Assembly: GCA_963924565.1 (NCBI GenBank) | Contig: OZ004614.1 | Span: 18,414,001 to 18,478,000, forward strand | DNA: 64,000 nt | Direction: 5' to 3' | From: Ascidiella aspersa | Taxonomy: Eukaryota | In this document: piece after piece, positions 40,500 through 64,000 of the stretch | Layout: every line of letters begins with the position of its first letter | How positions within the stretch are numbered: position 1 is the first letter of the stretch | Notes under the pieces: generated by a model | The model's database searches: none | Seen by the model: only the letters and a program-made list of their open reading frames with translations | Told to the model about the DNA's origin: nothing | Translations under genes and position numbers: made by a program

Positions 40500-40964
40500 T
40501 GCGGGCTGGGTTGAGAAGGTGTGCAGTGGGGTGACTGCAGGTTAAAGGGGAGGATATTTGGTGGCGTCTTATTGGACGGTTGTCCTCAACGCTTAGGTCG
40601 GGTAGTTCTAGCGGACCTTAAAAAAGGCCAGGAAAAGGGTTTTTTCCTTTTGCGCTTGGTAGGATCTGAGGTTGGGGTTTTTTGGGTTGGCCCACTTACC
40701 GTTCCGGCGGCAAAACTCTTGAAAAACCGAGTAATGCGTTTTTTTCCGGCAACGGGGTGGGACGGGTTGCTGGTACTAAGCCTGTTCAGGGAAATCCCTA
40801 CGCTCCAAACCTTCGGGGCTAGGCTGGAGCTTATTCTCTTTTCTTCCTGAATCAGGTAAGTCTGGCAGGATATTGCGCAGATCTTGCTGTTGTGGACGGT
40901 TTGTCGGGTCCTTTCGGAGCTCTGATCTGAAAGACTGACTGCTGACAGCTCTTCGGATATTGTG

Positions 40965-41160
40965 AAGGATAGAGTTCTTCACTTTGTAATAACTACGCCT
41001 CGCCTATCGAAAAACCGCCCGACGGTTGAAAAGCGCGCGCAGTAACACCCAATCGTTTTTTTTCGCGCACTCTCGCACTGCTCCATTGGCGAAAGCGTCG
41101 AACCGTCATTTGCATCTCTTCCGATCTATAAGCGACGAGAGTGGAAAAACACGCCACACT
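40965..41160. promoter_or_regulatory. Orphan H2A/H2B-type divergent histone promoter
   Basis: CCAAT 41049-41053, E2F-type TTTCGCGC 41061-41068, ATTGG 41085-41089, octamer ATTTGCAT 41108-41115 and TATAAG 41127-41132. Octamer followed by TATA is the classic H2B arrangement. It lies between head-to-head elements A1 and B1. Confidence 0.75.
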
Positions 41161-42582
41161 CTTCGTCGTCGAAAGCTACGAAGAACCGATTTCACTCGAG
41201 AAACAAGATACTCGAACATACAAGTGTATGACCCAAATATGTTGTCCAAGCCATGGAGCATGGTTGTTTCCCAGGGGAATCCCCACACCGCCGCAGGGAA
41301 TCCTTCCCTCGTCGCAGCGCCCCACAGGAGGGAGGTCTTCTCCCGTCGTACGGAGGTCGTTGCTAAAATTCCTAGCAAGAGGTCAAGGAACTTCATCTAC
41401 AGCCTCCTAAAACTGGTGTCTTTCGACACCAACAATCTGGAGGGGATAGTCGAACGAAAAGGAGGCTACACCGACTTTACGTGTAAAACTGAACAGCAAG
41501 CCGAAGAGTTGGTCTTCAAGCTGAAGAGCAGACCCGAGGTCGATCTCGCAAGGCGCTATGAGAGCGAATATACCAGCGTGGAAATCTCGCACGTGCCACC
41601 TCGCTTCAACATCGGTACGCTTATGGCGTACATCCAGAAGAACCACGGCACTGCCCTAGAGGCCAGAAAGCTAAAGGACGCCATAGCCGGTCTCCCAGAC
41701 GGGAGAATAAAAGCAGAGGTGCTCACCGAGCACCTGAAACAAAATCCCATCCCGGCAACCATCCGATGCGAAGGACTCACGTTTCCAGTGAGATACTACC
41801 AGCAACCACAGCAGTGCTTTCACTGCAGAGCCTTCGGCCACATCCGGGCAAATTGCCCGACACGCCAGCCCCCATCGCAGCGCACAGCAGACGAGGAACC
41901 CGACCCAGCGACAAACTCAGAGAAGACCCCGGAGAACATGCCAACAGACATCTCGTCGGAGAACGGTGAGAAGACGGAGAAAGAAAGAAGGACAGAGGCG
42001 GCAACATCATCCAGCATAACGGCGGCCACAGCAGTAACAGCAACAGCAGCATCCGGCAACTCAGCGGCAAACGATATCCAACAGCCAGAAGACGACTGAA
42101 CCACCAAACGACAAAGAAGCAGCGGCAACACCCCTCCCGAGAACGACCAAAAGCGTCCAAAAGCAGAAGATGACAGGCTATGCCTGCCGCAGTCCGAGGG
42201 GCCTTCTGTGGACGGGCCAGTGCGTAAATGCCGTGAATGCCTCGAGTGCGACTGCCAAGCTCTCGTGGATTTTCCAGAGCCGGGCATACCGACTGTATGC
42301 GACGCCTGCAAGAGGATCTTCCGCTGGTGCGATGAATGCAATTATGCATACGTGTGGCTTCCCAAAAGCCAGAAGTCTTGCCCCACTTGCGGGACTTTCA
42401 TACCGGAAAGCCTCTCACAAACCCTCCCGGGTTGACAGAGGCGGTCTGGAGCAGGAAATTACATAATCATTGTTTGATTTCAAAGTTTTTATTTGCATAT
42501 TTGTTTTTCGCCTCGCCCGTTTTATTTTCGTTCTTTTTTCTTATTCGTTTTCTTTAATTGATGCGAATAAACCAACATACTC
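41161..42582 (+). mobile_element. Family B ORF1-only non-autonomous Tx1 derivative (copy B1)
   Basis: ORF1 is homologous to family A ORF1 and is followed within ~150 bp by a 3' end (CGCCTCGCCCGTTTT...TTATTCG...GCGAATAAA) homologous to that of family A. No ORF2. Confidence 0.85.
41239..42435 (+). pseudogene. Family B ORF1 with one nonsense codon (42097-42099)
   Basis: MLSKPW...CFHCRAFGHIRANC. The TGA corresponds to TGC in copy B3, and the frame continues into Cys-rich ORF 42208-42435. Confidence 0.85.
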
Positions 42583-42872
42583 AGAAACAAGACACTCGAA
42601 CATACAAGACCCAAATATGATGTCCAAGCCATGGAACATGGCCGTTTCCCAGGGGAATCCCCACACCGCCGCAGGGAATCCTTCCCTCGTCGCAGCGCCC
42701 CGCAGGAGGGAGGAGGTCTTCTCCCGTCGTACGGAGGTCGTTGCTAAACTTCCTAGCAAGAGATCAAGGAACTACATCTACAGCCTCCTAAAACTGGTGT
42801 CTTTCGACACCAACAACCTGGAGGGGATAGTCGAAAGAAAAGGAGGCTACACGGACTTTGCTGAAGAGAGCT
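42583..42872 (+). mobile_element. Tandem second family B copy (B2), 5' part only
   Basis: Near-identical to 41199-41480; deletion junction into family C ORF2. Confidence 0.9.
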
Positions 42873-42875
42873 GAA

Positions 42876-45800
42876 GCTCCGGGTGTAGGTTGTTTCAATT
42901 CTTGTCCCTACGGAGGGTCTTCCTCCGGGGGGGTCGCCATTTTATTTCCTGCGTCCCCACTTTTACCCCTTTAGACATTTTCTCAGATCTCACCGGCAAA
43001 ATTATTTCCTACAATATTAATACTAATATATATATGCCCCGTCCGGTAAAACCAACCACTTAGCCAACAACAAATTTTTCGACAACCTTTACCCTTACGC
43101 AACCTCCCCCCACCCCACCATCCTGGCTGGAGACTTTAATTGCGTTCTCCAGCCCCACCTTGATAAATACCCCCCAGAACCATCCCGTCACCCCCAACAA
43201 ACCCTTAATTACCCTATTAGATACCCTTAACCCTTACGCCAAAACTTTCTCCCGCCGCACCCATAACTCCCAATCCCGCCTTGACCGTTTTTATGTTACC
43301 CCAATATTACCCCCGTTAATCACACCTTCACCCCAACCCCCTTTTCAGACCACGACCTAGTCACCCTCACCCTTGACATCCCCATTTCTCCCCCAGAGGC
43401 TACGGCCTCTGGAAAAACGACATCCGCACCCCCTTACCCACCCCGACTTCCAAATACCACTTTACATTAAATTAAACCGGCTTAAATCAATACAACAGGA
43501 CTATGACCCGCTTAATTTTTGGATTCTAGTCAAAACCCAAATCCCAGAAACAACATTCGACCCTTGCCAAATTACGGGAACAAATGAGTCCCCTTAAAAC
43601 CTTTGCTACTTTCCAAAAATTAAAACGTGAACTCAACCCCAATACTACCTGGAAAAATCAAAACAAGACCTTCTAAAGGCAAAGGTTGATAATATGGAAA
43701 ATAAAAATATATCTAATAAAGCCCTTTATACTCTCGTGTGTTGCCCCAAAAACAAAAAACCCATATCAACGAACTACTGGATGATTTCCATCTCTCCCAT
43801 ACCACCCCCGCCGAACTCTGCCACCTAGCGGAGAAATATTATAAAAACCTATACGACTGCCCCCCAACCCCCCAGACCCAAATTGACCCCTTCCTCCACA
43901 ACCATACCCCAATCCCCGACCAACTCCACCAATCACTCACCCAACCATTTACCCGCCATTAAATTAGCAACATTATTAAAACCTTCCCCACCGGTAAAAC
44001 CCCCGGGCCCGATGGCCTCAGCATTGAGTTTTTTACACTGAATGCTGGGAGAGCTCATCGGGCCCTATCCCACCCCCGCCCTCAATTACGCCTACCTAGC
44101 CCCAACCCTCCCCGCAGACTTTACCCACGGAGCCATAACCCTCATACCGAAAACCCCCGCTGCCAACTATCGCCCCATTTCTCTTCTAAACACAGATCTC
44201 AAAATTCTAAATCAACGCATTAAGCCGCAATTAAAACATTTTCTCTCTCCCCTTCAACACGCACAACCCGGAAAAAATACTTCAACCGCATCAACCCTCA
44301 TCCGCGACCTCTACCACCATGCCACCCAAAACACCCCCCCTCATATTTCATATCCCTTGATTTCAAAAAAGCCTTCGATTCGATCACCCACCCATATCTC
44401 ACCCACATCCTCACCACCCGCAACTTCCCCCAACCCTTCATAAATTACACCCAAACCAGCCAAACCTCAGCCACCTCCGCCATTTTAATAAATGGCTTCC
44501 CCACTAACCCCGTGGCGATCAGAAGAGGTGTGAGGCAAGGCGACCCGCTGAGTCTCACCCTCTTCCTGATCGCCCTTGACCCCCTCCTCAAAAACATCCA
44601 GGACAACCCCTCCATTTCTCCCTCCCCCGCCCCTACCCGCACCCCACCCAAACTCGTCGCTTACGCGGATGATGTTACCCTCACCCTTGCCCACCCCCAC
44701 TCCCTCCCCCCGCTATTCGACAACCGTACCGGCTTGACCCTCAACCCCCTCAAAACGAAGGAATCCCTCCCCCCTCCTCTCCACGACCTCCCCCAAATCG
44801 ACTGGAACCCTCTATCAATATCCCCCCTAAATATACCCATCGGAGACCCCACCCAAATTACTCAAGCTTGGCAATCTTCCATACACAAACTTTAAAAACA
44901 AGATCTCACAAATTACACATCCGTTTCCTAACCTTTGACTCCAAATCCATTCTCTCTAAGACCATCTCCTTCTCCCCAATTTTACTCAACTGGCATCCGT
45001 TTACCCAGCCCGAAACCTTATAAAAAATAAAATTAATTCCAAATTATAACAGTATTTCATCGGCCGCAACCCCCCCATTCCCCTCGACACCCTGGCGGCC
45101 AGTCGCCCCCACGGGGGCTACTCGGTCGCCAACATCCCCCTCTACCTCGACCTCTTCCTTACCCGCATAATAGGCCCCTACCTCAACCACCGCACCCTTG
45201 ATTCATTCCCCCGCTGATACCCAAAATCAAATTTTGGAATACAACCTTCTATCAAAGAAATACGATCTTAGAATAAAAAATAATCTGCCACACACCATGT
45301 TTCCCTCACCATATTATCAACAAATTTGGACTTTAATAACTCAATATAATCCGACATTGACCAAACTCACGTGCCCCAAAATAAAACCCCTCTACCTCCG
45401 CCTCACCATCCCCCAGCAATACTCTAACCCCAACCCCAGCTACACCCCACCCCAAAGCCTAATACTTTTCTTTAACAACTCTATTCGATCCCGGTGCCAA
45501 ATTGAACAGGCCAGACCCTCTTCTCCCCATATTGACCTGTTTGTAACCCTCCTTTAATGACCAACTGACCCCTCCTCTCCCACCAAACTAAATTGTCCAA
45601 ACCCAATGTCAACCCAAAACCTTAGGTATCCGTTCCTACCCCCTTAAATTTTTAAATCTCTTGACTTGTTATTATTGTTTATGCCTGCCTTGTTCTTTTT
45701 TATTTCTCTCGCTTTTAACACTCAGTTATCTTTCGAAATGGGAAACGTATCCCTGAACCATTTGCGCCCCGTAGGACGCCATTTTTGTTTTTTCACCGCC

Positions 45801-46161
45801 ATTTTGTTTTTCATCCGCCATTTTGTTTTTTTTTAATTTTTCAATTCATTTACATAGAGCCTGCTTTGGGCTTCTATTCCACCCCCACCTAAATGTTAGG
45901 CTTTAACAAACCCCGATACGCACATCCTGGGAAAGGGGAGCATCATAGCTTTCCTCTCAAAACGAAAGACCTGCCGCATGCATACTCCTCCTTGTAGGGG
46001 GAGTGAAGGGCAGGTCCCGTCTAACTTCCATACTGGTGTATATTTCACCACCTTCACTCGCCTTTTCTTTTCCGTTATACAATAAATTCAAATAAAGCAA
46101 ACTACACGGGGCAATGATGAGCCCAAACAAACCAAAGGGGGGGTTAGCACATTGCATTGCT
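42876..46161 (+). mobile_element. Family C Tx1 element: degenerate ORF2 and 3' UTR
   Basis: ILAGDFN, SRLDRFY, GKTPGPDG, YRPISLLNTD, GVRQGDPLS and YADD across several frames; conserved 3' modules at 45920-46155. Confidence 0.92.
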
Positions 46162-46174
46162 AAGGCTGTCAATG

Positions 46175-49100
46175 TTCGACTTTTTAACTCGACAAAGCAA
46201 GAAACATGTCAAGACGCGGTTAATAGCAAACGAAAGCTTTTAGAATTGTTTTTCACTGGTAAATGAGAAGGAGAAGAGGCTGCAAGCTTCAGCAGAGGCT
46301 GAACTTTGTCTATAGTGATACAGTTTTCTAAGTGACTATTTTGCTGCTTTTTCCCTGACAAGCAAGCTTTTTCGACGAAAAATTGGATTTATTTCATGAC
46401 CTTATTTACCTGGATTATTTCGACCAGTATCGGAGTACATACGTGTACAGACTACTCACCGAAAGGTTACTTTTGTTATTATATTTCACGTGTATCACGT
46501 GTGTTAACTTCACAACTCTACTAGCGGAGCCGCCATTTTATTAAAATGGCGACCGCGGGCCCAAGCTGGGCCAATATTTGTGCGAAAGATTTTGATGTTA
46601 CCAAGTTTAACGTGTCTCGCAAGGGCGAGTTAGAAATCCACTTTAACCCTCCGCAATCAGGACCTCAGGTGTACGAAGTATTAGAATCGGTTGGCTTCAA
46701 TTATAAACGCTTTCTAGAAAGCTGTATACAAAAACCTAATGGTAAAAGTGTCTTGTGCTGCCATACAGATGAGGAAGCTAGAGACCTTGCATGCAAACTT
46801 GACAAGTTACCGTTTGTCAAATACGCCGAACCTTTCGAAGAGTCAATCATCAAAGTCAAACTTAGCTAGGATTTCTTTTCTGCCAAATTTGCCAAATGCA
46901 CCGGCCACCGAGAAATTGTAGATTTGCGTCAGGTTCATGCAGGAAAGGTGCACCTTGACTTAGACCGGAAAGAGCTTGAAAAAAAGCCTATACCCAAAGA
47001 AATTAAAATGGGGGCCCTCATATGATTGAAGTTTACTATCAAGAGCAACCAGAATGCTGTCGATATTGTCGCAAGCCAGGGCACACCCTCGAAGAGTGTG
47101 ATAAATTAAAAAAGAAAAAGGCAGACAACGAAGATAGAGAGAGAATAAACACCGAAGAGAAAGAAAGGAAGAAAGAAGAGGAAGAAAGAAAAAGGCAAAA
47201 TATGTTGTTAAACATCGCTGACATGCTGAACAAAGATAGAGAAAGGTCTTTAGTTGCAACATCCACAACCCTTCGCGACCCGTCAAAAATTGGAAAAATT
47301 GCCCCCGCAGATTTCTCCTCCCCAGGGGGCCGAAAGCCAAATAGTAGCTCTTCGAGCACATTAAGCTCCACGGAGACAGAGGAGGCTGAGGCAGAAAGCC
47401 TAGGAACAGAAATCGACGGCACTGAAAACCCTGAGCCAAGTCAACCAGACCATAGTGACGCACCCCCATAAGATTCAGAACTCGCCAACAGAAAACGCCC
47501 CTTTGAATTCTCAAGTTTTTCAAATAGAAAAGCACCCTCTCATAGAATGCTCACTATGCAACGGGCTGGGCAGCCATGCTCACCAGTGTCCAAACGAACA
47601 AGGCGACGACCCCCCCAAAGGAAATGCCACAGTTTCATATTGTTGATTCGCCAGCAACCAAGACCTCCCCCCCACTAATGTAAATACCCAGCTCAAATGG
47701 AGTCACACAAGTTTTAATGTAAATGGTCTTAGTGGCCACGCCAAGCGTAATGCAGTTTTTACGTACCTTAAAAGCTTACAGTTTGATATAGTGTTGTTGC
47801 AGGAGACCCACTCGACACCTCAGGTTGAGTCAACCTGGGCTGCCGAGTGGGCTCTGGGTGTAGGTTTTTTCGAATTCTTGTCCCTCCAGAGGGTCTTCCT
47901 CTGGGGGAGTCGCCATTTTATTTCCTGCGTTCCCACTTTACCCCTTTAGATATTTTCTCAGATCTCACCGGTAAAATTATATCCTGTAATATTAATACTC
48001 TAACCCATACCATTCATTTAACCAATATATAATCAATTACTTGGCCAACAACAATTTTTTACGTAACCTCCCCCCACCCACCCCACCATCCTGACTGGAG
48101 ACTTTAACTGCGTTCTCCAGCCCCACCTTGATAAATACCCCCCACAACCATCCCGTCACCCCAACAAATCTTTAATGACCCTGTTAGATACCCTTACCCT
48201 CACCGACACCTTTCGCACCCTTAACCCTTACACCAAAACCTTTTCCCGCCGCACCCATAACTCCCAATCCCGCCTTGACCGTTTTTATTCTACCCCTAAT
48301 ATCACCCCGGTTAACCACACCTTCACGACCTAGTTACCTTGACATACCCATCTCACCCCCCAGAGGCTATGGCCTCTGGAAAAGTGACACCCGTGCCCTT
48401 ACCCACCCCGACTTCCAAATTCCACTTAACATTAAATTAAACCGGCTAAAATCATTACAACAAGACTATAACCCACTTGATTTTTGGATCTTAGTTAAAA
48501 CCCAAGTCGCAAACCTCCATAAAATCATAAGTAAAAAACTTAACATAGAGGGAAATAGCCCAGAAACATTCGGACTCTTGCCAAATTACGGGAACAAATG
48601 AATCCCCTTAACTACCCCCAAACTTTTGCTACTTTCCAAAAATTAAAACATGAACTCAATAAATATTACTTGGAAAAATCAAAACAAGACCTTCTAAAGG
48701 CAAAGGTTGATAATATGGAAAATAAAAATGTATCTAATAAATCCCTCTATACCCGCGTCTTACCGCAAAGCAAACAAACCCACATTAAAGAATTACTGGA
48801 TGACTACCACCTCCCCCACACCACCCCCGCCGAACTCTGCCACCTAGCGGAGAAATACTACAAAAACCTATACGACTGCCCCCCAACCCCCAGACCCAAA
48901 TTGACCCCTTCCTCCACAACCACACCCCCATCCCCGACCAGTCACCCGCCACGAAATTAGAAACATTATTAAAACCTTCCCCACCGGTAAAACCCCCGGG
49001 CCCGATGGCCTCAGCATTGAGTTTTACACTGAATGCTGGGAGCTCATCGGGCCCTATCTCACCCCCGCCCTCAATTACGCCTACCTAGCCCCAACCCTCC

Positions 49101-51499
49101 CCGCAGACTTTACCCACGGAGCCATAACCCTCATACCGAAAACCCCCGCTGCCAACACCCTTGCCAACTATCGCCCCATTTCTCTTCTAAACACAGATCT
49201 CAAAATCCTTAACAAAATTCTAAATCAACGTATCAAGCCGCAATTAAAACATTTTCTCTCTCCCCTTCAACACGCACAACCCGGAAAAAATACTTCAACT
49301 GCATCAATCCTCATCCGACCCAAAATACCCCCCCTCATATTTCATATCCCTTGATTTCAAAAAAGCCTTCGATTCGTTCACCCACCAAAACGTCACCCAC
49401 ATCCTCACCACCCGCAACTTCCCCCCCCCACCCTTCATAAATTACACCTAAACCACCAAAACCTCAGCCACCTCCGCCATTTTATTAAATGGATTCCCCA
49501 CTGACCCCGTGGTGAGACAAGGCGACCCGCTGAGTCTCACCCTCTTCCTGATCTCCCTCGACCCCCTCCTGAAAAACATCCAGGATCTCCCCCGCCCCCG
49601 ACCCGCACCCCACCCAAACTCGTCGCTTACGCGGACGATGTCACCCTAACCCTTGCCCACCCCCACTCCCTCCCCCCGCTTTTTGACACCCTGGCCAAAT
49701 TTGCAACTGTATCCGGCTTGACCCTCAACCCCTTCAAAACGAAGGCTACCTACACCAAATCCCTCCCCCTCCCCTCCACGGCCTCCCCCAAATCGACTGG
49801 AACCCTCTAGCAATATCCCCCCTTAATAACCCCATCGGAGACCCCACCCAAATCACCCAAGCTTGGCAATCTTCCTACACAAACTTTAAAAACAAGATCT
49901 CACAAATCACACATCCGTTTCTAACCTTTGACTCCAAATCCATTCTCTCTAAGACCATTCTCCTCCCCAATTTTACGCAACTGGCATCCGTCTACCCAGC
50001 CCCAAACCTTTTAAAAAATAAAATTAATTCTAAATTATTGCAGTATTTCATTGGCCCCCGCAACCCCCCCATTCCCCTTGACACCCTGGCGGCCAGTCGC
50101 CCCCACGGGGGCTACTCGGTCGCCAACATCCCCCTCTACCTTGACCTCTTCCTCACCCGCATCATTGGCCCCTACTTAACCCACCGCATTCTAGATTCCC
50201 CAGCCGACACCCAAAACCAAATAATTGAATATAATCTCGGAATCCAATTATCCAATAAATATGAACTAAGAATTAAAAATAACCTTCCGCACACAATGTT
50301 TCCCTCACCATATTATCAACAAATTTGGACTTTAATAACTCAATATAATCCGACATTGACTGAAACCTGTAAAATCCCACACCACCCCCAATATACTCTC
50401 CCTAGACCCCAACTGCCCCCTTTGCCTTTCCCGATACGAATCGGACGCCCATTTACTTCACAACTGCACCCAAATCCAACCCCTCCTCACCCATGTTAAA
50501 AACCTTTATTTTAATTTTACATCCTAGCCCACTACCTTTTTTGATTACCATTCCCATATTTATTTTGTCCACCCGCCCCGCTCCCCACTCCCCAACAACG
50601 ACCTCATCACCCTCCTAAATACAATCCTACACCACACCATCTGGAAAACCCGAATTAGCAAAATAATCACCCCTGACCCGCAACCCACCCCACCCCAAAG
50701 CCTAATACTATTTTTTAATAATTCTATTCGATCCCGGTGCCAAATTGAACAGGCCAGACCCTCTTCTCCCCACATTGACCTGTTCGTAAAGCTAACCTCC
50801 CTCCTTTAATTACCAACTGACCCCTCCTCTCCCACCAAACTAAATTGCCCCTGCCCCAGGTCAACCCAAAACCTTAGGCAATTCCTCCAACCTCCCTTCT
50901 AACAATATCTCTCTTTTTATTTTGTTATTGTTTTTGCTTTTGCCTTTTGCCTTTTTATTACTCTCTTGTTTCTGCCCTTAAAAACCTTAGTTAAATGTAG
51001 AGAATTTCGACTCTAAACCCACCGGGTCTCCCAATGCAGCGAGACGCCATTTTGTTTTTAAATTGCCATTTTCGTTCTTTACTGTGTCAATTTTTGAACA
51101 CTTCTATTGTACCGGCTAACCCTATTAAGGCTGTCACACATTCCAACAAGCTCCCTCTGAAACCAATACTAACCTGGTGCTACATTCTCAATTCTTAATA
51201 TGCATATCCTCAAACGAGGGGAGCTACAACATGCAATTCCACACCATTTCTCTATCTAACTTTAGACCTGCTCACGCATACTCCTCTCGCTAGGGGGAGT
51301 GAAGAGTAAACCCGTGCTTCATTAAAAACTCACCCCGAAATTTTCTTTTTCATCGCTCCGTTCGTTTGTTTCCCCGCACCCGCTTAAAATAAATTTACAA
51401 AAATGGGCAATGATGAGCCCAAACCAAAGGGAGGGTTAGCACATTGTTAACCAACCACCCCTGAGGTACCTGAGCCCTCAAGAAAAAAAAAAAAAAAAA
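46175..51499 (+). mobile_element. Family D (C-related) Tx1 element, full length but disrupted, with poly(A) tail and TSD
   Basis: ORF1 46546-~47646 (CRYCRKPGHTLEEC), ORF2 ~47697-50815, poly(A) 51483-51501. AAGGCTGTCAATG occurs at both 46162-46174 and 51500-51512. Confidence 0.93.
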
Positions 51500-51512
51500 A
51501 AGGCTGTCAATG

Positions 51513-55507
<3,995 letters not shown>

Positions 55508-59247: not shown

Positions 59248-60387
59248 TCGACACCAACAACCTGGAGGGGATAGTCGAAAGAAAAGGAGGCTACACGGAC
59301 TTTACGTGCAAAACTGAACAGCAAGCTGAAGAGCAGACCCGAAGTCGATCTCGCAAGGCGCTATGAGAGCGAATACACCAGCGTGGAAATCTTGCACGTG
59401 CCACCTCGCTTCAACATCGGTACGCTTATGGCGTACATCCAGAAGAACCACGGCACTGCTCTAGAGGCCAGAAAGCTAAAGGACGCCATAGCCGGTCTCC
59501 CAGACGGGAGAATAAAAGCAGAGGTGCTCACCGAGCACCTGAAACGAAATCCCATCCCGGCAACCATCCGATGCGAAGGACTCACATTTCCAGTGAGGTA
59601 CTTACAACCACAGCAGTGCTTCCACTGCAGAGCCTTCGGCCACATCCGGGCAAATTGCCCGACACGCCAGCCCCCATCGCAGCGCACATCAGACGAGGAA
59701 CCCGACCCAACGGCAAACCTCGTAAACATGGCAGCGGACACCTCGTCAAAAGGCAAAGAGGAGACGCAACAAGTGAAAAAACCAGAAGTGGCAACATCGC
59801 CAAACGCAACAGCAACAACAATCTCCGGCAACTCAGCGGCAACCGACATCCAACAGCCAGAAGACGACTGCACCACCAAACGACAAAGAAGCAGCGGCAA
59901 CACCCCTCCCGAGAACGACCAAAAGCGACCAAAGGCCGGAGATGACAGGCTATACCTGCCACCGTACGAAAAGCCTTCTATCCACAACGAAGGGTGCGAT
60001 TACCTCATCTGCACCTGCACCGGTATGGTGGAATATCCAGAGGTGGTCGCACCGACCGTATGCGGTGAATGTTTGAAGCTCTACCGCATGTGCAATGGAT
60101 GCAATGAAAAGCACACGAGTGGTACCTCGAGAGCCAGAAGCTTTTCCCCAAGTGCAAGACCCCCATAATAGGCTTCCTCTCGCAAACCCTTCCGGGTTAA
60201 CAGGGGTGTGGCCTAGAGTGGGAATCCCGCAGAAAGTCAAATGCGCTATTTTTTGCCTAATTTGCATAATTTCGTTAATTTCAATTATTTTTTTATATTC
60301 ACATTTGTTTTCGTTTCGCCCGTTTTATTTCGTTCTTTTTCTCCCTTATTCGTTTTCTTTAATTGATGCGAATAAACCAACATACTC
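59248..60387 (+). mobile_element. Family B copy B3 (ORF1-only, 5' deleted)
   Basis: ORF 59383-60168 is homologous to B1; same 3' end GCGAATAAACCAACATACTC; no ORF2. Confidence 0.9.
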
Positions 60388-60417
60388 ATGGCTGCAAGCA
60401 AAGGAAAGGCTGTTAAG
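60388..60417 (+). pseudogene. Probable N-terminal codons of histone H2B (MAASKGKAVK), interrupted
   Basis: The ATG directly follows the B 3' end on the octamer side of the divergent unit. SKG-KAVK resembles the H2B tail motif KGSKKAV. Only 10 codons, so this is an inference. Confidence 0.5.
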
Positions 60418-63400
60418 TAATAGCTTTGTTGTACGTGAAGGAGTAGAAGCCGCAAGGCTCAGCAACTGGCTGACCTTGTTTCTAGTGTTGTTACAGCAAA
60501 CCTGTCTTACTGCTGCCATTTAGCTTTGAGGCATCGCTGAATACAAAGAGTAGCAGTTGCTTGGATTTATTTTCATCGCTCAGCACAACGGCTTGGATTT
60601 CATCGTTTCCGTTATATGGAAACATATCGCTTCATAAGGTAACAATTGTTTGTATATTTTTCATTCGCTGGGACCCCCCGTTCGAAGCTGGATAACAAGA
60701 ACCTGTAAAGACTTCGATATGAAGCGCTTAAACGTGGACCGAACAGGCAAGGTAACCATCCAGTTTGCCCCGCCCCAATCGAGACCACAGATTTACGAGC
60801 TCATGGAGCATCTCGGCTTTAACTACAAGCGCCACCTTGAAAGCTTCATACAAAAGCCGAACGGGAAAAACTATTTTGTGCTGCCACGACCAGCAGCAAG
60901 CTGTCGAATTAGCTGCCAAGCTAAATACATCGAACGTAGTTAAACGGGCCGTCCCCTACGAGGACTCAATTATCAAGGCAAGGTTTGTTACATACCAAAT
61001 CGTATTAGACCTGATACTGTCAGGGACTTTTTCTCTGCCTGCTGCCCCGTGCAGACTCGCCATTGACGCACCTGATTCAAGGCGCATTAATGCCGGGAAA
61101 CTCATCTTAGACTTAGACCGCCAGTCTGTAGAGCTAAAGGCAATACCCAAGGAAATAAAAATGGGCCATACCATTATCGGGGTCCATTACGATGGCCAAC
61201 CTGAATCATGCAGGTACTGCAAACAATCTGGCCACGTCTTAGAGACATGCCCCAAATTATTAAAGAAAAACCGCGATAACGAAGAACGAAAATTGTTAGA
61301 AACCAAAAGAGCAGAAGAGGAACGACAACTTGCGCAAAATAGGCAACAAATTGTCCTTGGGGAACCTCGGTCACATTCTTCCCGCAGAGACCAGCACCCC
61401 GGGAGGAAGACGAGTACCCAGGAGCGGAAGTCAACGCGCATCAACCCGCCTCCACTGGAGAGCTCTGCTGAAACAACAACTACTTCCAGCTCTGATGATC
61501 TGAGCACTGGCTCATCAACAGAGGAGGAGGAGCAACAGGAGGAACAGGAGAAGGAGGAGCAGCGGAAGGAGAAGGAGCAAGATAAGGAGGAGCAGGAGCA
61601 GCAGGATGAACACCACCATAACACACCGGACCCGGACTCGGAACGGGGCAAAGGTACTCAACCTGTTGGCGGCACCAAGAGACCCTTAGAGATCTCGCCG
61701 TCCGACACTAGTGGCACATCCAGAAAAATCCCCTACACCGACTTGGTGTGTCAGGCCTGCCATGGCAGCAGTACCAATTGGCCGCAACCTTTTATGCTCA
61801 GAATGTGGGGACGATTCCTTCGCACCCCTCAACTATAGTTGCCCCCCAGTTTTGATAACCCCCTCTTTTAAAAAAAAATGTCAAAATTTTAAAACCCCTT
61901 ATCAATAAACAAAATGGCGTCACATTTAAAAATCGCAACTTTTATTGTAAACGGTTTAACCAATGTAACTAAACGTAATGCTGTCTTCAACTATTTAAAA
62001 ACTTTAAGCGTCAACATTTTAGTTTTGCAGGAGACCCACTCGACACCCCAGGTTGAGTCAACCTGGGCTGCCGAGTGGGCTCCGGGTGTAGGTTGTTGTT
62101 TCAATTCTTGTCCCTCCGGAGGGTCTTCCTCCGGGGGTGTCGCCATTTTATTTCCTGCGTCCCCACTTACCCCTTTAGACATTTTCTCAGATCTCACCGG
62201 CAAAATTATATCCTGTAATATTAATACTCTAACCCATACCATACATTTAACCAATATATATGCCCCGTCCGGTAAAATCAATTACTTAGCCAACAACAAA
62301 TTTTTCGACAACCTTTACCCTTACGTAATCGCTCACCTCCATAAAGAAATAGCTAAAAAACTTAACGTAGAAAAATCCCGGAAAATAGCCCAGAAACATT
62401 CGGACCTTGCCAAATTACGGGAACAAATGAGTCCCCTTAACTACCCCCAAACCTTACTTTCCAAAAATTAAAACGTGAACTCAACCAATACTACCTGGAA
62501 AAATCGAAACAAGACCTTCTAAAGGCAAAGGTTGATAATATGGAAAATAAAAATATATCTAATAAAGCCCTTTACACCCGAGTATTGCCACAAAGGAAAA
62601 AACCCATATTAAAGAATTACTGGACGAATTTCACCTCCCACATACCACCCCCTCAGAACTCTGCCACCTAGCGGAAACTTTTACCAAAACTTGTACGACT
62701 CCCCCCCGATCCCCCAGACCCAATACGACCCCTTCATCCACAATCACACCCCAATTCCCGACCAACTTCACCACTCACTCACCCAACCATTCACCCAACA
62801 CGAAATTAGAAACATCATTAAGACCTTCCCCACCGGTAAAACCCCCGGGCCCGACGGTCTCAGCATCGAGTTTTACACGGAATGCTGGGACCTCATCGTG
62901 CCCTATCTCACCCTTGCCCTCAATCATGCTTACCTTGCCCCAATCCTCCCCGCCGATTTCACCCACGGAGCCATAAACCCTTATCCCCAAAACCCCCGCT
63001 GCCAACACCCTTGCCAACTATTGCCCCATTTCTCTTCTAAACACAGATCTCAAAATCCTAAACAAAATTTTACCGTATTAAACCGCATTTAAAACACTTT
63101 CTATCACCCTTACAACACGCACAACCCGGGAAAAATACATCAACTGCATCAACCCTCATCCGTGACCTCTACCACCATGCCACCCAGAACATCCCCCCTT
63201 CCTATTTTATATCCCTTGATTTTAAAAAAGCCTTCGATTCAATCACCCACCCCTGGCTCACCCACATCCTCACCACCCGCAACTTCCCCCCACCCTTCAT
63301 AAATTACATCCAAACCACCCAAACTTCAGCTACCTCCAAAATTTTAATAAATGGCTTCCCCACTAACCCGTGGCGATCAGAAGAGGTGTGAGGCAAGGCG

Positions 63401-64000
63401 ACCCGCTGAGTCTCACCCTTTTCCTGATCGCCCTCGACCCCTTCCTCTAAAACAGCCAGGACAACCCCTCCATTTCTCCCTCTCCCGCCCCTACCCGCAC
63501 CCCACCCAAACTCGTCGCATACGCGGACGATGTTAGCCCCCACTCCCTCCCCCCGCTATTCGACACCTTGGCCAAATTTACAACCGTATCCGGCTTGACC
63601 CTCAACCCCCTCAAAACGAAGGCTACCTATACCAAATCCCTCCCCATCCCCTCCATGATATACCTCAAATCGATTGGAACCCCCTATCCATATCCCCCTT
63701 AAATATACCCATAGGAGACCCCACAAACTTTAAAAACAAGATCTCACAAATTACACATCCGTTTCTAACCTTTGACTCCAAATCCATTCTCTCTAAGACC
63801 ATCCTTCTCCCCAATTTTACTCAACTGGCATCCGTTAACCCAGCCCCAAACCTTAAAAAAAAAAAAATAAAAAATCCCATTCCCCTCGACACCCTGGCGG
63901 CCAGTCGCCCCCATCCCCCTCTACCTCGACCTCTTCCTTACCCGCATAATAGGCCCCTACCTCAACCAACGCACCCTTGATTCCCCCGCTGATACCCAAA
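60418..64000 (+). mobile_element. Family C/D-type Tx1 element (5' UTR, frameshifted ORF1, degenerate ORF2), running off the window
   Basis: ORF1 ~60650-61838 (KDFDMKRLNV.., CRYCKQSGHVLETC); ORF2 from 61914 (MASHLKIATFIVNG, LQETH, GKTPGPDG, YADD). Preceded by AAGGCTGTTAA. Confidence 0.92.

What the first reader, a model, noticed from the sequence alone, without database searches (positions are those of the whole stretch)
46162..51512. Recurrent target AAGGCTGTYAA for families C/D, probably inside the H2B N-terminal tail
AAGGCTGTCAATG flanks element D on both sides (46162 and 51500, the latter directly after poly(A)). AAGGCTGTTAA (60406-60416) precedes a diverged C/D-type element with a different 5' UTR. 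The same site used by different elements indicates sequence specificity. At 60388 it is in frame as M-A-A-S-K-G-K-A-V-K. As for family E in H3, the junction falls at an AAG lysine codon. C and D form a head-to-tail tandem separated only by the target duplication.
Basis: partly seen in the sequence, partly recalled or inferred. Interest (0 to 1): 0.8.

Follow-up and report, generated by a model that had tools for sequence, protein, structure and literature searches.

The report
Jumping genes homing to histone H2B
Several different L1-like jumping genes have landed at exactly the same spot, lysine codon 12 of histone H2B, and one arrived carrying the leader of a histone H4 mRNA. This points to a retrotransposon lineage that lives inside histone genes much as R1/R2 elements live in ribosomal RNA genes.

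Summary
AAGGCTGTYAA occurs three times in the window against 0.17 expected. It is part of this genome's native H2B gene (ATG GCT GCA AGC AAA GGC ACC AAA AAG GCT GTC AAG AAG = MAASKGTKKAVKK).

- **D (46175-51499):** a full-length, polyadenylated APE+RT element flanked by a perfect 13-bp duplication.
- **F (60418 onward):** ends 1.4 kb past the window with A10 followed by GGCTGTCAAGAA, a 12-13-bp duplication of the same site.
- **Other junctions:** three more element types join H2B after the same CAAG.
- **New result:** D's first 45 nt are the histone H4 leader plus H4 codons 1-5. D is therefore a retrocopy of an RNA started at the H4 cap site that landed in H2B. A dispersed relative carries the H2B and H4 leaders nested; another carries the H2B leader and has a 28-bp duplication.
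- **In-frame stops:** the element's TAATAG is in frame in both H2B and H4.

Caveats: 48 of 58 family 3' ends lie elsewhere. All copies are degraded. No occupied site keeps the H2B body. The six intact H2B genes are unoccupied. No RNA support was found.

Earlier notes of this scan describe the same guild in neighbouring windows of this genome. I found no published histone-targeting LINE.

The parts
40965..41176 (.). H2A/H2B bidirectional promoter and first bases of the H2B leader (context)
   Evidence: 100% match to the native promoter and leader over 40 nt. DNA depth is about 600 against about 5-20 elsewhere, and 620 reads run on into the native H2B start.
41161..42583 (+). Family B element (ORF1 only) in the H2B leader; context
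   Evidence: Its start matches the native H2A leader. CCHC knuckle, below the Pfam cut-off.
42584..46161 (+). Second B 5' part (to ~42875) fused to C (5'-truncated ORF2 and 3' UTR; last ~35 nt and poly(A) missing), abutting the target copy
   Evidence: Self-BLAST: 42579-42859 matches 41194-41478 at 92%; 42876-45361 matches D at 81%. RVT_1 hits. 3' end read.
46162..46174 (+). Upstream copy of D's target-site duplication, AAGGCTGTCAATG (H2B codons K9-K12 with a T inserted)
   Evidence: Aligns to native AAGGCTGTCAA-GAAG.
46175..46219 (+). Captured histone H4 5' leader (31 nt) plus H4 codons 1-5 (ATG TCA AGA CGC GG) at D's 5' end
   Evidence: 42/45 identical to six native H4 genes, starting ~31 nt after the H4 TATA box. 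About 900 DNA reads cross into native H4 on both sides.
46220..46226 (+). Start of the element proper, (T)TAATAG: two stop codons in frame with the captured H4 ATG
   Evidence: Reading. The same TAATAG is in frame after H2B K12 at 60418 and in L091.
46175..51499 (+). Element D: full-length L1-like LINE (ORF1, APE, RT, C-terminal zinc domain; many stops and frameshifts), poly(A) at 51483-51499
   Evidence: Three-frame translation, Pfam Exo_endo_phos, A run.
51500..51512 (+). Downstream copy of D's target-site duplication
51513..55249 (+). Element E: its 5' end joins H2B ...AAG(K13) and begins with an H3-leader-like 19-mer; its poly(A) joins the H3 Lys4 codon
   Evidence: Alignment to the H3 leader is 16/19, and 6 of 1000 shuffles reach it. 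zf-RVT.
55250..55470 (+). Histone H3 fragment starting at (AA)G CAA ACC (K4-Q-T), with an internal deletion
   Evidence: One search compared with native H3.
59248..60387 (+). B-like element ending directly before the H2B ATG
   Evidence: 78% to 41423-42583; sequence.
60388..60417 (+). H2B start codon and 9 more codons (MAASKGKAVK; 6-nt deletion relative to native); 60406-60417 is the upstream copy of F's duplication
60418..64000 (+). Element F, starting TAA TAG in frame; continues 1401 nt past the window to A10 + GGCTGTCAAGAA
   Evidence: APE hit.

Best explanation
C, D, F and their relatives G1 and G2 are degraded copies of an L1-like non-LTR retrotransposon lineage (ORF1; ORF2 with apurinic-type endonuclease, reverse transcriptase and a C-terminal zinc domain). 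This lineage preferentially integrates into the 5' end of histone genes, here into the H2B coding sequence at codons 9-12. The inferred mechanism is ordinary target-primed reverse transcription. The bottom strand is nicked in the T5 run opposite ACC AAA AAG, and the poly(A) RNA is primed there. The top strand is cut after GTC AAG, which gives the 12-13-bp duplication (A)AAGGCTGTCAAG. A resident copy has no need of its own promoter. It is transcribed from the histone cap site as leader + first codons + element, and the element's first bases (TAATAG) stop the short histone reading frame. Such chimeric RNAs re-insert into the same H2B site (forming tandem arrays), into other histone genes, or occasionally elsewhere. 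Shown here: the target is native H2B; there are two clean duplication-flanked polyadenylated insertions and several further junctions at the same nucleotide; retrocopies begin with captured H4 and H2B leaders. Inferred: the nick positions, that the endonuclease (and not something else) reads the site, and that transcription runs from the histone promoter.
For: Native H2B contains AAGGCTGTCAAG at K9-K12, and 620 independent DNA reads confirm the native start. D has a perfect 13-bp duplication and A17-19. F has 5' AAGGCTGTTAAG and 3' A10-GGCTGTCAAGAA. The outer flanks of the D and F sites are unrelated, so only the ~13-16 nt are shared. G1 starts directly after F's downstream copy. An independent H2B stub with the full N-terminus is joined after ...GCTGACAAG to TAATAG. 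G2 and a chromosome-6 copy carry ...CTGTCAAG|TAG. D's first 45 nt are the H4 leader plus five codons, starting ~31 nt after the H4 TATA box. D therefore arrived by retrotransposition without H2B homology at its 5' end. The chromosome-6 copy starts at the H2B leader and has a 28-bp duplication. L096 carries H2B leader + H4 leader + D-type UTR. TAATAG is in frame in both H2B and H4 contexts. Ten of 58 family 3' ends lie in 0.24 Mb around the histone genes, about 200-fold enrichment, and at only a few discrete sites. Domains are confirmed by Pfam and by similarity to the L1 endonuclease.
Against: 48 of 58 3'-end motifs are dispersed, with unrelated flanks and ordinary A-started duplications. D's closest ORF2 relatives (83-88%) are dispersed copies, not C or F. 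None of the six intact H2B genes is occupied, and no occupied site keeps the H2B body. All occupied sites lie in a rearranged, TE-filled satellite of the histone array, part of it segmentally duplicated. The flanking B elements are as diverged (78%) as the elements themselves, so some occupied stubs may be paralogues of one old insertion. Every copy examined has broken reading frames. The RNA run gave 15 reads and none on the elements, with about 6% of the run read. No cross-species test was possible.
Confidence: 0.68

Rival explanations
1. Regional rather than sequence targeting. The elements are drawn to transcribed 5' ends of histone genes (for example through the histone locus body or open chromatin). 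A generic L1-type endonuclease then cuts the nearest suitable T-run. The same site recurs only because it is the one good A5/T5 run in that short accessible stretch.
For: The D lineage has used at least three histone sites: H4 codon 5, the H2B leader and H2B K12. Sister families sit in the H1, H2A and H2B leaders and at H3 K4, all within about 50 nt of the cap site and next to A runs. Dispersed copies show ordinary L1-like, A-started duplications.
Against: D's target had lost the H2B promoter-proximal context. It was about 16 nt of H2B sequence between C's 3' end and E's 5' end, about 5 kb from the promoter, yet it was hit at the same nucleotides. Both nick positions are reproduced to within 1-2 nt in D and F.
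Confidence: 0.2
2. One ancient chance insertion into H2B. The occupied unit was then copied by segmental duplication and unequal crossing-over, and the copies diverged in place. No targeting is involved.
For: The F/G1/G2 block is present twice, at C8:18.317-18.330 and 18.474-18.488 Mb. B flanks are as diverged as the elements. No occupied site retains an H2B body.
Against: D carries an H4 leader, its own poly(A) and a perfect 13-bp duplication, so it is a separate retrotransposition event. F is likewise bounded by its own duplication and A10. A 12-13-bp repeat is too short to drive unequal crossing-over. Four element subtypes with different 5' ends share the junction.
Confidence: 0.07
3. Homology-driven homing. 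Chimeric RNAs or cDNAs that carry H2B leader and N-terminal sequence at their 5' end recombine with H2B genes. The precise junction would then reflect homology, not endonuclease choice.
For: Retrocopies that begin with the H2B leader exist. Co-transcript homology is the accepted explanation for precise 5' junctions of R1 and R2 (established knowledge, not tested here).
Against: D's 5' end is H4-derived. It shows no significant similarity to the H2B leader or N-terminus (116-249 of 1000 shuffles reach the score), yet it has a clean junction and a duplication. The 3' junction (poly(A) to AAGG) cannot come from 5' homology.
Confidence: 0.05

Closest known systems
R1 elements of arthropod 28S rRNA genes (APE-type, site-specific non-LTR retrotransposons)
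   Same: Apurinic-type endonuclease plus reverse transcriptase. Repeated insertion at one nucleotide position of a tandemly repeated host gene. A fixed short target duplication. Inactivated host units accumulate beside functional ones. (My knowledge of R1; the APE and RT domains were tested.)
   Different: The target is the coding sequence of a protein-coding gene transcribed by RNA polymerase II. The elements have poly(A) tails. Specificity is leaky (48 of 58 3' ends are elsewhere). Clade membership was not tested; the endonuclease is closest to L1 among solved structures.
Tx1-clade sequence-specific L1-like elements (targets: snRNA, 5S rRNA, microsatellites, other transposons)
   Same: L1-like architecture with an APE endonuclease and target-specific integration into multicopy sequences. 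PMC4640811 names the Tx1 clade as one of three groups that hold most target-specific non-LTR families.
   Different: The literature I could search reports no histone target. RT phylogeny was not done, so this is a resemblance and not membership.
SLACS/CZAR/CRE and NeSL-1 in spliced-leader RNA genes; R2 in 28S rDNA
   Same: They live a few bases into a multicopy gene and rely on the host promoter, so transcripts begin with host-gene bases (my knowledge). Here, retrocopies begin with H2B or H4 leaders at the cap site.
   Different: Those elements use a restriction-like endonuclease and sit in non-coding RNA genes. Here the endonuclease is APE-type, the host is an mRNA gene, and the element supplies in-frame stop codons.

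Membership tests
APE-type non-LTR retrotransposon (LINE), L1-like | ORF2 with an N-terminal apurinic-like endonuclease and a reverse transcriptase | tested here: met
   Exo_endo_phos in D and F pieces. RVT_1 in C pieces (one of the two just below the cut-off). zf-RVT in E. L1 endonuclease is the best solved-structure match, E about 1e-4.
APE-type non-LTR retrotransposon (LINE), L1-like | Poly(A) tail and a target-site duplication of about 10-20 bp | tested here: met
   D: A17-19 and 13 bp. F: A10 and 12-13 bp. Chromosome-6 copy: 28 bp.
APE-type non-LTR retrotransposon (LINE), L1-like | Placement in the L1 or Tx1 clade by RT phylogeny | not tested
   All ORF2 copies are broken into short pieces. 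Word-index searches of ORF1 and a C-terminal piece were blank.
Sequence-specific non-LTR retrotransposon | Independent insertions at the same nucleotide position of one target sequence | tested here: met
   D and F (different subfamilies, unrelated outer flanks), plus the G1, G2 and L091 junctions after ...CAAG.
Sequence-specific non-LTR retrotransposon | Most copies of the family reside in the target | tested here: not met
   Only 10 of 58 3'-end motifs lie in the histone region and 4 of those at H2B K12; 48 are dispersed. Of the 10 full-length 5' UTRs, 8 are in histone stubs, 3 of them segmental duplicates. The 3' motif may be shared by non-specific sister families.
Sequence-specific non-LTR retrotransposon | Target use conserved in related species | not testable with these tools
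The genome collections hold only bacteria and archaea. A second organism's run holds D-like ORF1 sequence at about 96% but gives no junction information.
Host-promoter-dependent residents (R2 / SLACS style) | Transcripts start at the host gene's start site | tested here: inconclusive
   Indirect support is strong: retrocopies begin at the H4 and H2B cap-site regions. There is no direct RNA evidence: 15 RNA reads, none on the elements.

The most novel reading that the evidence does not exclude
A lineage of LINEs uses a protein-coding multigene family, the replication-dependent histone genes, as its home. It hops between H4, the H2B leader and H2B codon 12, and records each stay as a nested captured mRNA leader. 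It is adapted to life inside a coding sequence through a terminal TAATAG that closes the host reading frame. It possibly recognises a GTCAA(R) motif shared by the H2B, H1 and H3 leaders and mimicked at H2B K12.
Probability: 0.45. Interest if true: 0.8.

Novelty: new variant of a known kind. Interest (0 to 1): 0.7.

Why it matters
All well-described site-specific LINEs use non-coding multicopy targets: rRNA, snRNA, spliced-leader and tRNA genes, telomeres and microsatellites. A lineage that homes into the coding sequence of histone genes and borrows RNA polymerase II histone promoters would extend the 'safe haven' strategy to protein-coding gene families. It would also give a natural record, in nested captured leaders, of how target specificity shifts. 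And it would offer a short (about 13-16 nt) candidate recognition site for a natural L1-type endonuclease. For the host, it explains a degenerate, transposon-filled satellite beside the working histone array.

Tried and rejected
1. I first thought D's extra 5' sequence was a diverged H2B leader. Global alignments were not significant: 116-249 of 1000 shuffles reached the score. DNA reads then showed it is the H4 leader.
2. Cross-species test through ORF1 relatives. The word-index search was blank.
3. Clade naming through a C-terminal ORF2 piece.
4. A full census of 5' junctions of dispersed copies.
   - The chromosome-7 copy has a CTGTCAAG about 120 nt upstream of its homology start, but no duplication was found: inconclusive.
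   - The chromosome-1 copy sits in a local duplication of more than 80 bp of flank and is uninformative.
5. RNA evidence. The RNA run gave 15 reads. Those at 46181-46219 are native H4 mRNA, and three carry the adapter directly before 46181, which fits a cap site near D's first base but is weak.
6. Strict endonuclease specificity for the 11-mer alone is rejected as stated, because dispersed copies lie at unrelated sequences.
Full report
**Observation.** The pattern AAGGCTGTYAA occurs at 46162, 51500 and 60406, all on the + strand. That is three matches against 0.17 expected, and no shuffle of 100 reached three.
- The 13-mer AAGGCTGTCAATG lies directly before D's first base and directly after D's A run (51483-51499).
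- The bases outside the two copies differ, so the duplication is exactly 13 bp.
- At 60388 the sequence reads ATG GCT GCA AGC AAA GGA AAG GCT GTT AAG TAA TAG.

**What the elements are.** Self-comparison and three-frame translation show four related elements on the + strand.

| Element | Window coordinates | State |
|---|---|---|
| C | 42876-46161 | 5'-truncated, fused to a second family-B 5' part |
| D | 46175-51499 | full length |
| E | 51513-55249 | 5' end joins H2B, 3' end joins H3 |
| F | 60418 to beyond the window | continues past 64000 |

- Pieces hit Exo_endo_phos, RVT_1 and zf-RVT, and the ORF1 of B and E has a CCHC knuckle just below the Pfam cut-off.
- The endonuclease piece is closest to the L1 endonuclease among solved structures.
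- All copies carry many stops and frameshifts.
- The sense strand is unusually C-rich and G-poor, with GC skew down to -0.56.

**Is the site H2B?** Yes.
- A Pfam histone scan of the window's own genome found a tandem histone array at C8:18.246-18.302 Mb, about 110-170 kb upstream of the window.
- Its H2B gene reads ...cctcctgtcaaa ATG GCT GCA AGC AAA GGC ACC AAA AAG GCT GTC AAG AAG CAC..., that is MAASKGTKKAVKKH.
- The motif is therefore codons K9-A10-V11-K12 of the N-terminal tail.
- The stub at 60388 is the same start with a 6-nt in-frame deletion (CACCAA).
- Six native copies carry the unoccupied site.
- In an independent DNA run, about 620 reads run from the promoter into TCCTGTCAAAATGGCTGCAAGCAAAGGCAC.
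- The exact stub string occurs only twice in the genome. The second copy (L001) is a segmental duplicate with the same B-ATG-F arrangement.

**More junctions at the same nucleotide.**
- **F's 3' end.** I fetched the DNA after the window. F ends 1401 nt past the window as ...cctgagccctcgagt A10 GGCTGTCAAGAA. F is therefore bounded by AAGGCTGTTAAG and (A)AGGCTGTCAAG, a 12-13-bp duplication with one mismatch.
- **G1.** Directly after F's downstream copy another element starts with AAATAGTC.
- **G2.** A further degenerate unit follows: H2A stub, promoter, B, then ...ccgtcaa CTGTCAAG | TAGTATTT....
- **L091 stub.** A 5'-UTR motif search found only eight such 5' ends in the genome, seven near the histone region and one on contig 6. 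One of them, at C8:18338321 (L091), shows B's 3' end, then ccgtcaaa ATG GCT ACA AGC AAA GGC ACA AAA AAG GCT GAC AAG | TAA TAG. This is an H2B stub with the undeleted N-terminus joined at the same position.
- **Shared sequence only.** The sequences outside the D site (C's 3' end and E's 5' end) and outside the F site (H2B start and G1) are unrelated. The two clean insertions share only the ~13-16 nt of H2B sequence.

**D came from H4.** Laying reads on 40900-46900 showed that 46175-46219 is high-copy DNA. About 900 reads run off on both sides, into ...TATAAAAGGCGGTGCTAAGAGAGAGATTTCACA upstream and CAAAGGAGGAAAAGGATTGGGAAAGGGAGG downstream.
- A pattern search found this 45-mer, 42/45 identical, once per native histone unit.
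- It is the H4 leader (31 nt, starting about 31 nt after the H4 TATA box) plus ATG TCA GGA CGC GG, H4 codons 1-5.
- D is therefore a full-length retrocopy of an RNA that began at or next to the H4 cap site in a master copy sitting after H4 codon 5. It then integrated into the H2B site with a poly(A) tail and a 13-bp duplication.
- It brought no H2B homology at its 5' end. My earlier idea that this stretch was a diverged H2B leader was not significant.

**Captured leaders elsewhere.**
- The contig-6 copy begins CACACTCTTCGTCGTCGAAAGCACTGTAGAACCTCCCGTCAA CTGTCAAG TAGTAT.... This is the H2B leader from the cap region, a gap that removes the ATG, and then the K12 junction.
- That copy is flanked by a 28-bp duplication, AAGTATTCCGTAGCAATGAAGTGCTGCA. 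It is an off-target retrocopy of an H2B-resident master, and it is also degraded.
- The only other D-type 5' UTR in the genome, at C8:18.72 Mb, begins with the H2B leader (tcttcgtcgtcgaaagcactgaagaacctcctgtcaaaa). The H4 leader follows, then ATG TCA GGA CGC GG, then the element. Two stays in two histone genes are recorded one inside the other.

**In-frame stops.** The element proper begins TAATAG. After H2B K12 it reads AAG TAA TAG (F; L091). After H4 codon 5 it reads GGT TAA TAG (D). In G1 it reads AAG AAA TAG. It is in frame in both independent host contexts, where chance is about 1 in 9. This fits a function in closing the short host reading frame before ORF1, but it remains an inference.

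**How specific?** Not strictly.
- The conserved 3'-end 20-mer occurs 58 times at up to 2 mismatches and 0 times in the control.
- Ten of these lie in the 0.24-Mb histone region, roughly 200 times the expectation, and at a few discrete sites: H2B K12, H3 K4 and the H1 leader.
- The other 48 are dispersed, with unrelated flanks and ordinary duplications where these are visible.
- D's nearest ORF2 relatives (83-88%) are dispersed copies.
- None of the six intact H2B genes is occupied, and no occupied site keeps an H2B body.
- The occupied stubs sit in a rearranged, partly duplicated satellite of the array.
- The flanking B elements are as diverged as the elements themselves. Some stubs may therefore descend from one old insertion.
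- D and F remain two unambiguous separate events. G1, G2, E and C probably add more.

**E and the missing H2B body.**
- E's 5' end follows H2B ...AAGGCTGTCAA(T)GAAG and starts with a 19-mer that matches the end of the H3 leader at 16/19 (6 of 1000 shuffles reach this).
- E's poly(A) is joined to H3 at (AA)G CAA ACC, which is Lys4.
- The element that starts in L091 ends in the same way, at GCAAACCGCC.
- I read this as recombination between residents of an H2B site and of the next unit's H3 site, deleting what lay between. This was not tested.

**Mechanism.** The most likely mechanism is target-primed reverse transcription.
- The first nick would fall in the T5 run opposite ACC AAA AAG.
- The second cut would fall after GTC AAG.
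- Transcription of residents would start from the histone promoter.
- The nick positions are inferred from the junctions.
- Promoter use is inferred from the captured leaders. The RNA run gave only 15 reads, none on the elements.
- The main rival is regional targeting of histone 5' ends combined with a generic L1-type preference for T runs. It is weakened because D's target was only ~16 nt of H2B sequence, about 5 kb from the promoter and embedded between two elements.

**Known relatives and novelty.**
- Functionally the closest are R1 (APE-type, one site in 28S rDNA), the Tx1-clade specific elements, and the promoter-borrowing SLACS/CRE/NeSL and R2 elements.
- PMC4640811 states that target-specific families fall mainly in the early-branched, Tx1 and R1 groups and target repetitive sequences.
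- Four full-text searches and one review gave no histone-targeting LINE. Subscription literature and Repbase were not searchable.
- Earlier notes of this scan describe the same guild in neighbouring windows of this genome. The phenomenon is therefore not new within the scan.
- New here are the H2B K12 confirmation, the D and F duplications, D's H4 leader, the nested leaders and the in-frame stops.
- Those notes call the organism a sea squirt; I did not test that.

Noticed in passing
L096 (G000:C8:18721701-18722100, minus strand): A dispersed D-type copy begins with the H2B leader, followed by the H4 leader, H4 codons 1-5 and then the element. Two captured histone leaders are nested, recording successive stays in H4 and in the H2B leader.
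   Followed up: partly
L081-L083, L014 (G000:C8:18264.7-18270.7 kb and two further units): E-like elements sit in the H1 5' leader of otherwise native histone units. The 5' junction is after ...gaagagaagt, and the 3' junction is a very long poly(A) of 40-70 nt before gaaatcgtcaaaATG. The long tails suggest comparatively recent insertions into the working array.
   Followed up: partly
window 51513-55470; L091/L092 (C8:18338.3-18342.6 kb): Two elements have their 5' end at H2B K12/K13 but their 3' end at H3 Lys4. The H2B body, H1, H4 and the H3 promoter are missing between them. This probably reflects recombination between residents of neighbouring sites.
   Followed up: no
window 42000-55000 and 62000-64000: There is extreme strand composition in the C/D/E/F bodies: about 38% C and 10% G on the sense strand, GC skew -0.3 to -0.56. 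This gives proline- and threonine-rich pseudo-ORFs. The cause is unknown.
   Followed up: no
native leaders: L011 1489-1500 (H2B) and ~2986-2997 (H1), L007 1466-1483 (H3); window 46167-46172: GTCAA(A/G) lies just upstream of the ATG in the H2B, H1 and H3 leaders and recurs at H2B K11-K12. H4 has ATGTCAGG at its start. This may be a shared recognition motif or a conserved histone leader element.
   Followed up: partly
window 40900-41187: DNA read depth over the H2A/H2B promoter is about 600 against about 5-20 for flanking elements. The histone array therefore has far more units in that individual than the ~8-10 assembled.
   Followed up: no
window 46386-46787 (run X4): Contigs from a run labelled as a different organism match D's ORF1 region at about 96%. 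This region is otherwise unique in this assembly, so a close relative carries D-type elements.
   Followed up: no
window 55250-55470: The H3 fragment after E has an internal in-frame loss (K4-Q-T-A joined to R26-K-S-A-P) and diverges from H3 after ...SAVMAL. It is a pseudogene.
   Followed up: partly
G000:C1:20.39-20.62 Mb: A cluster of several D/C-like copies whose flanks are themselves duplicated (more than 80 bp of 3' flank recurs upstream). This is a local amplification away from the histone genes.
   Followed up: no
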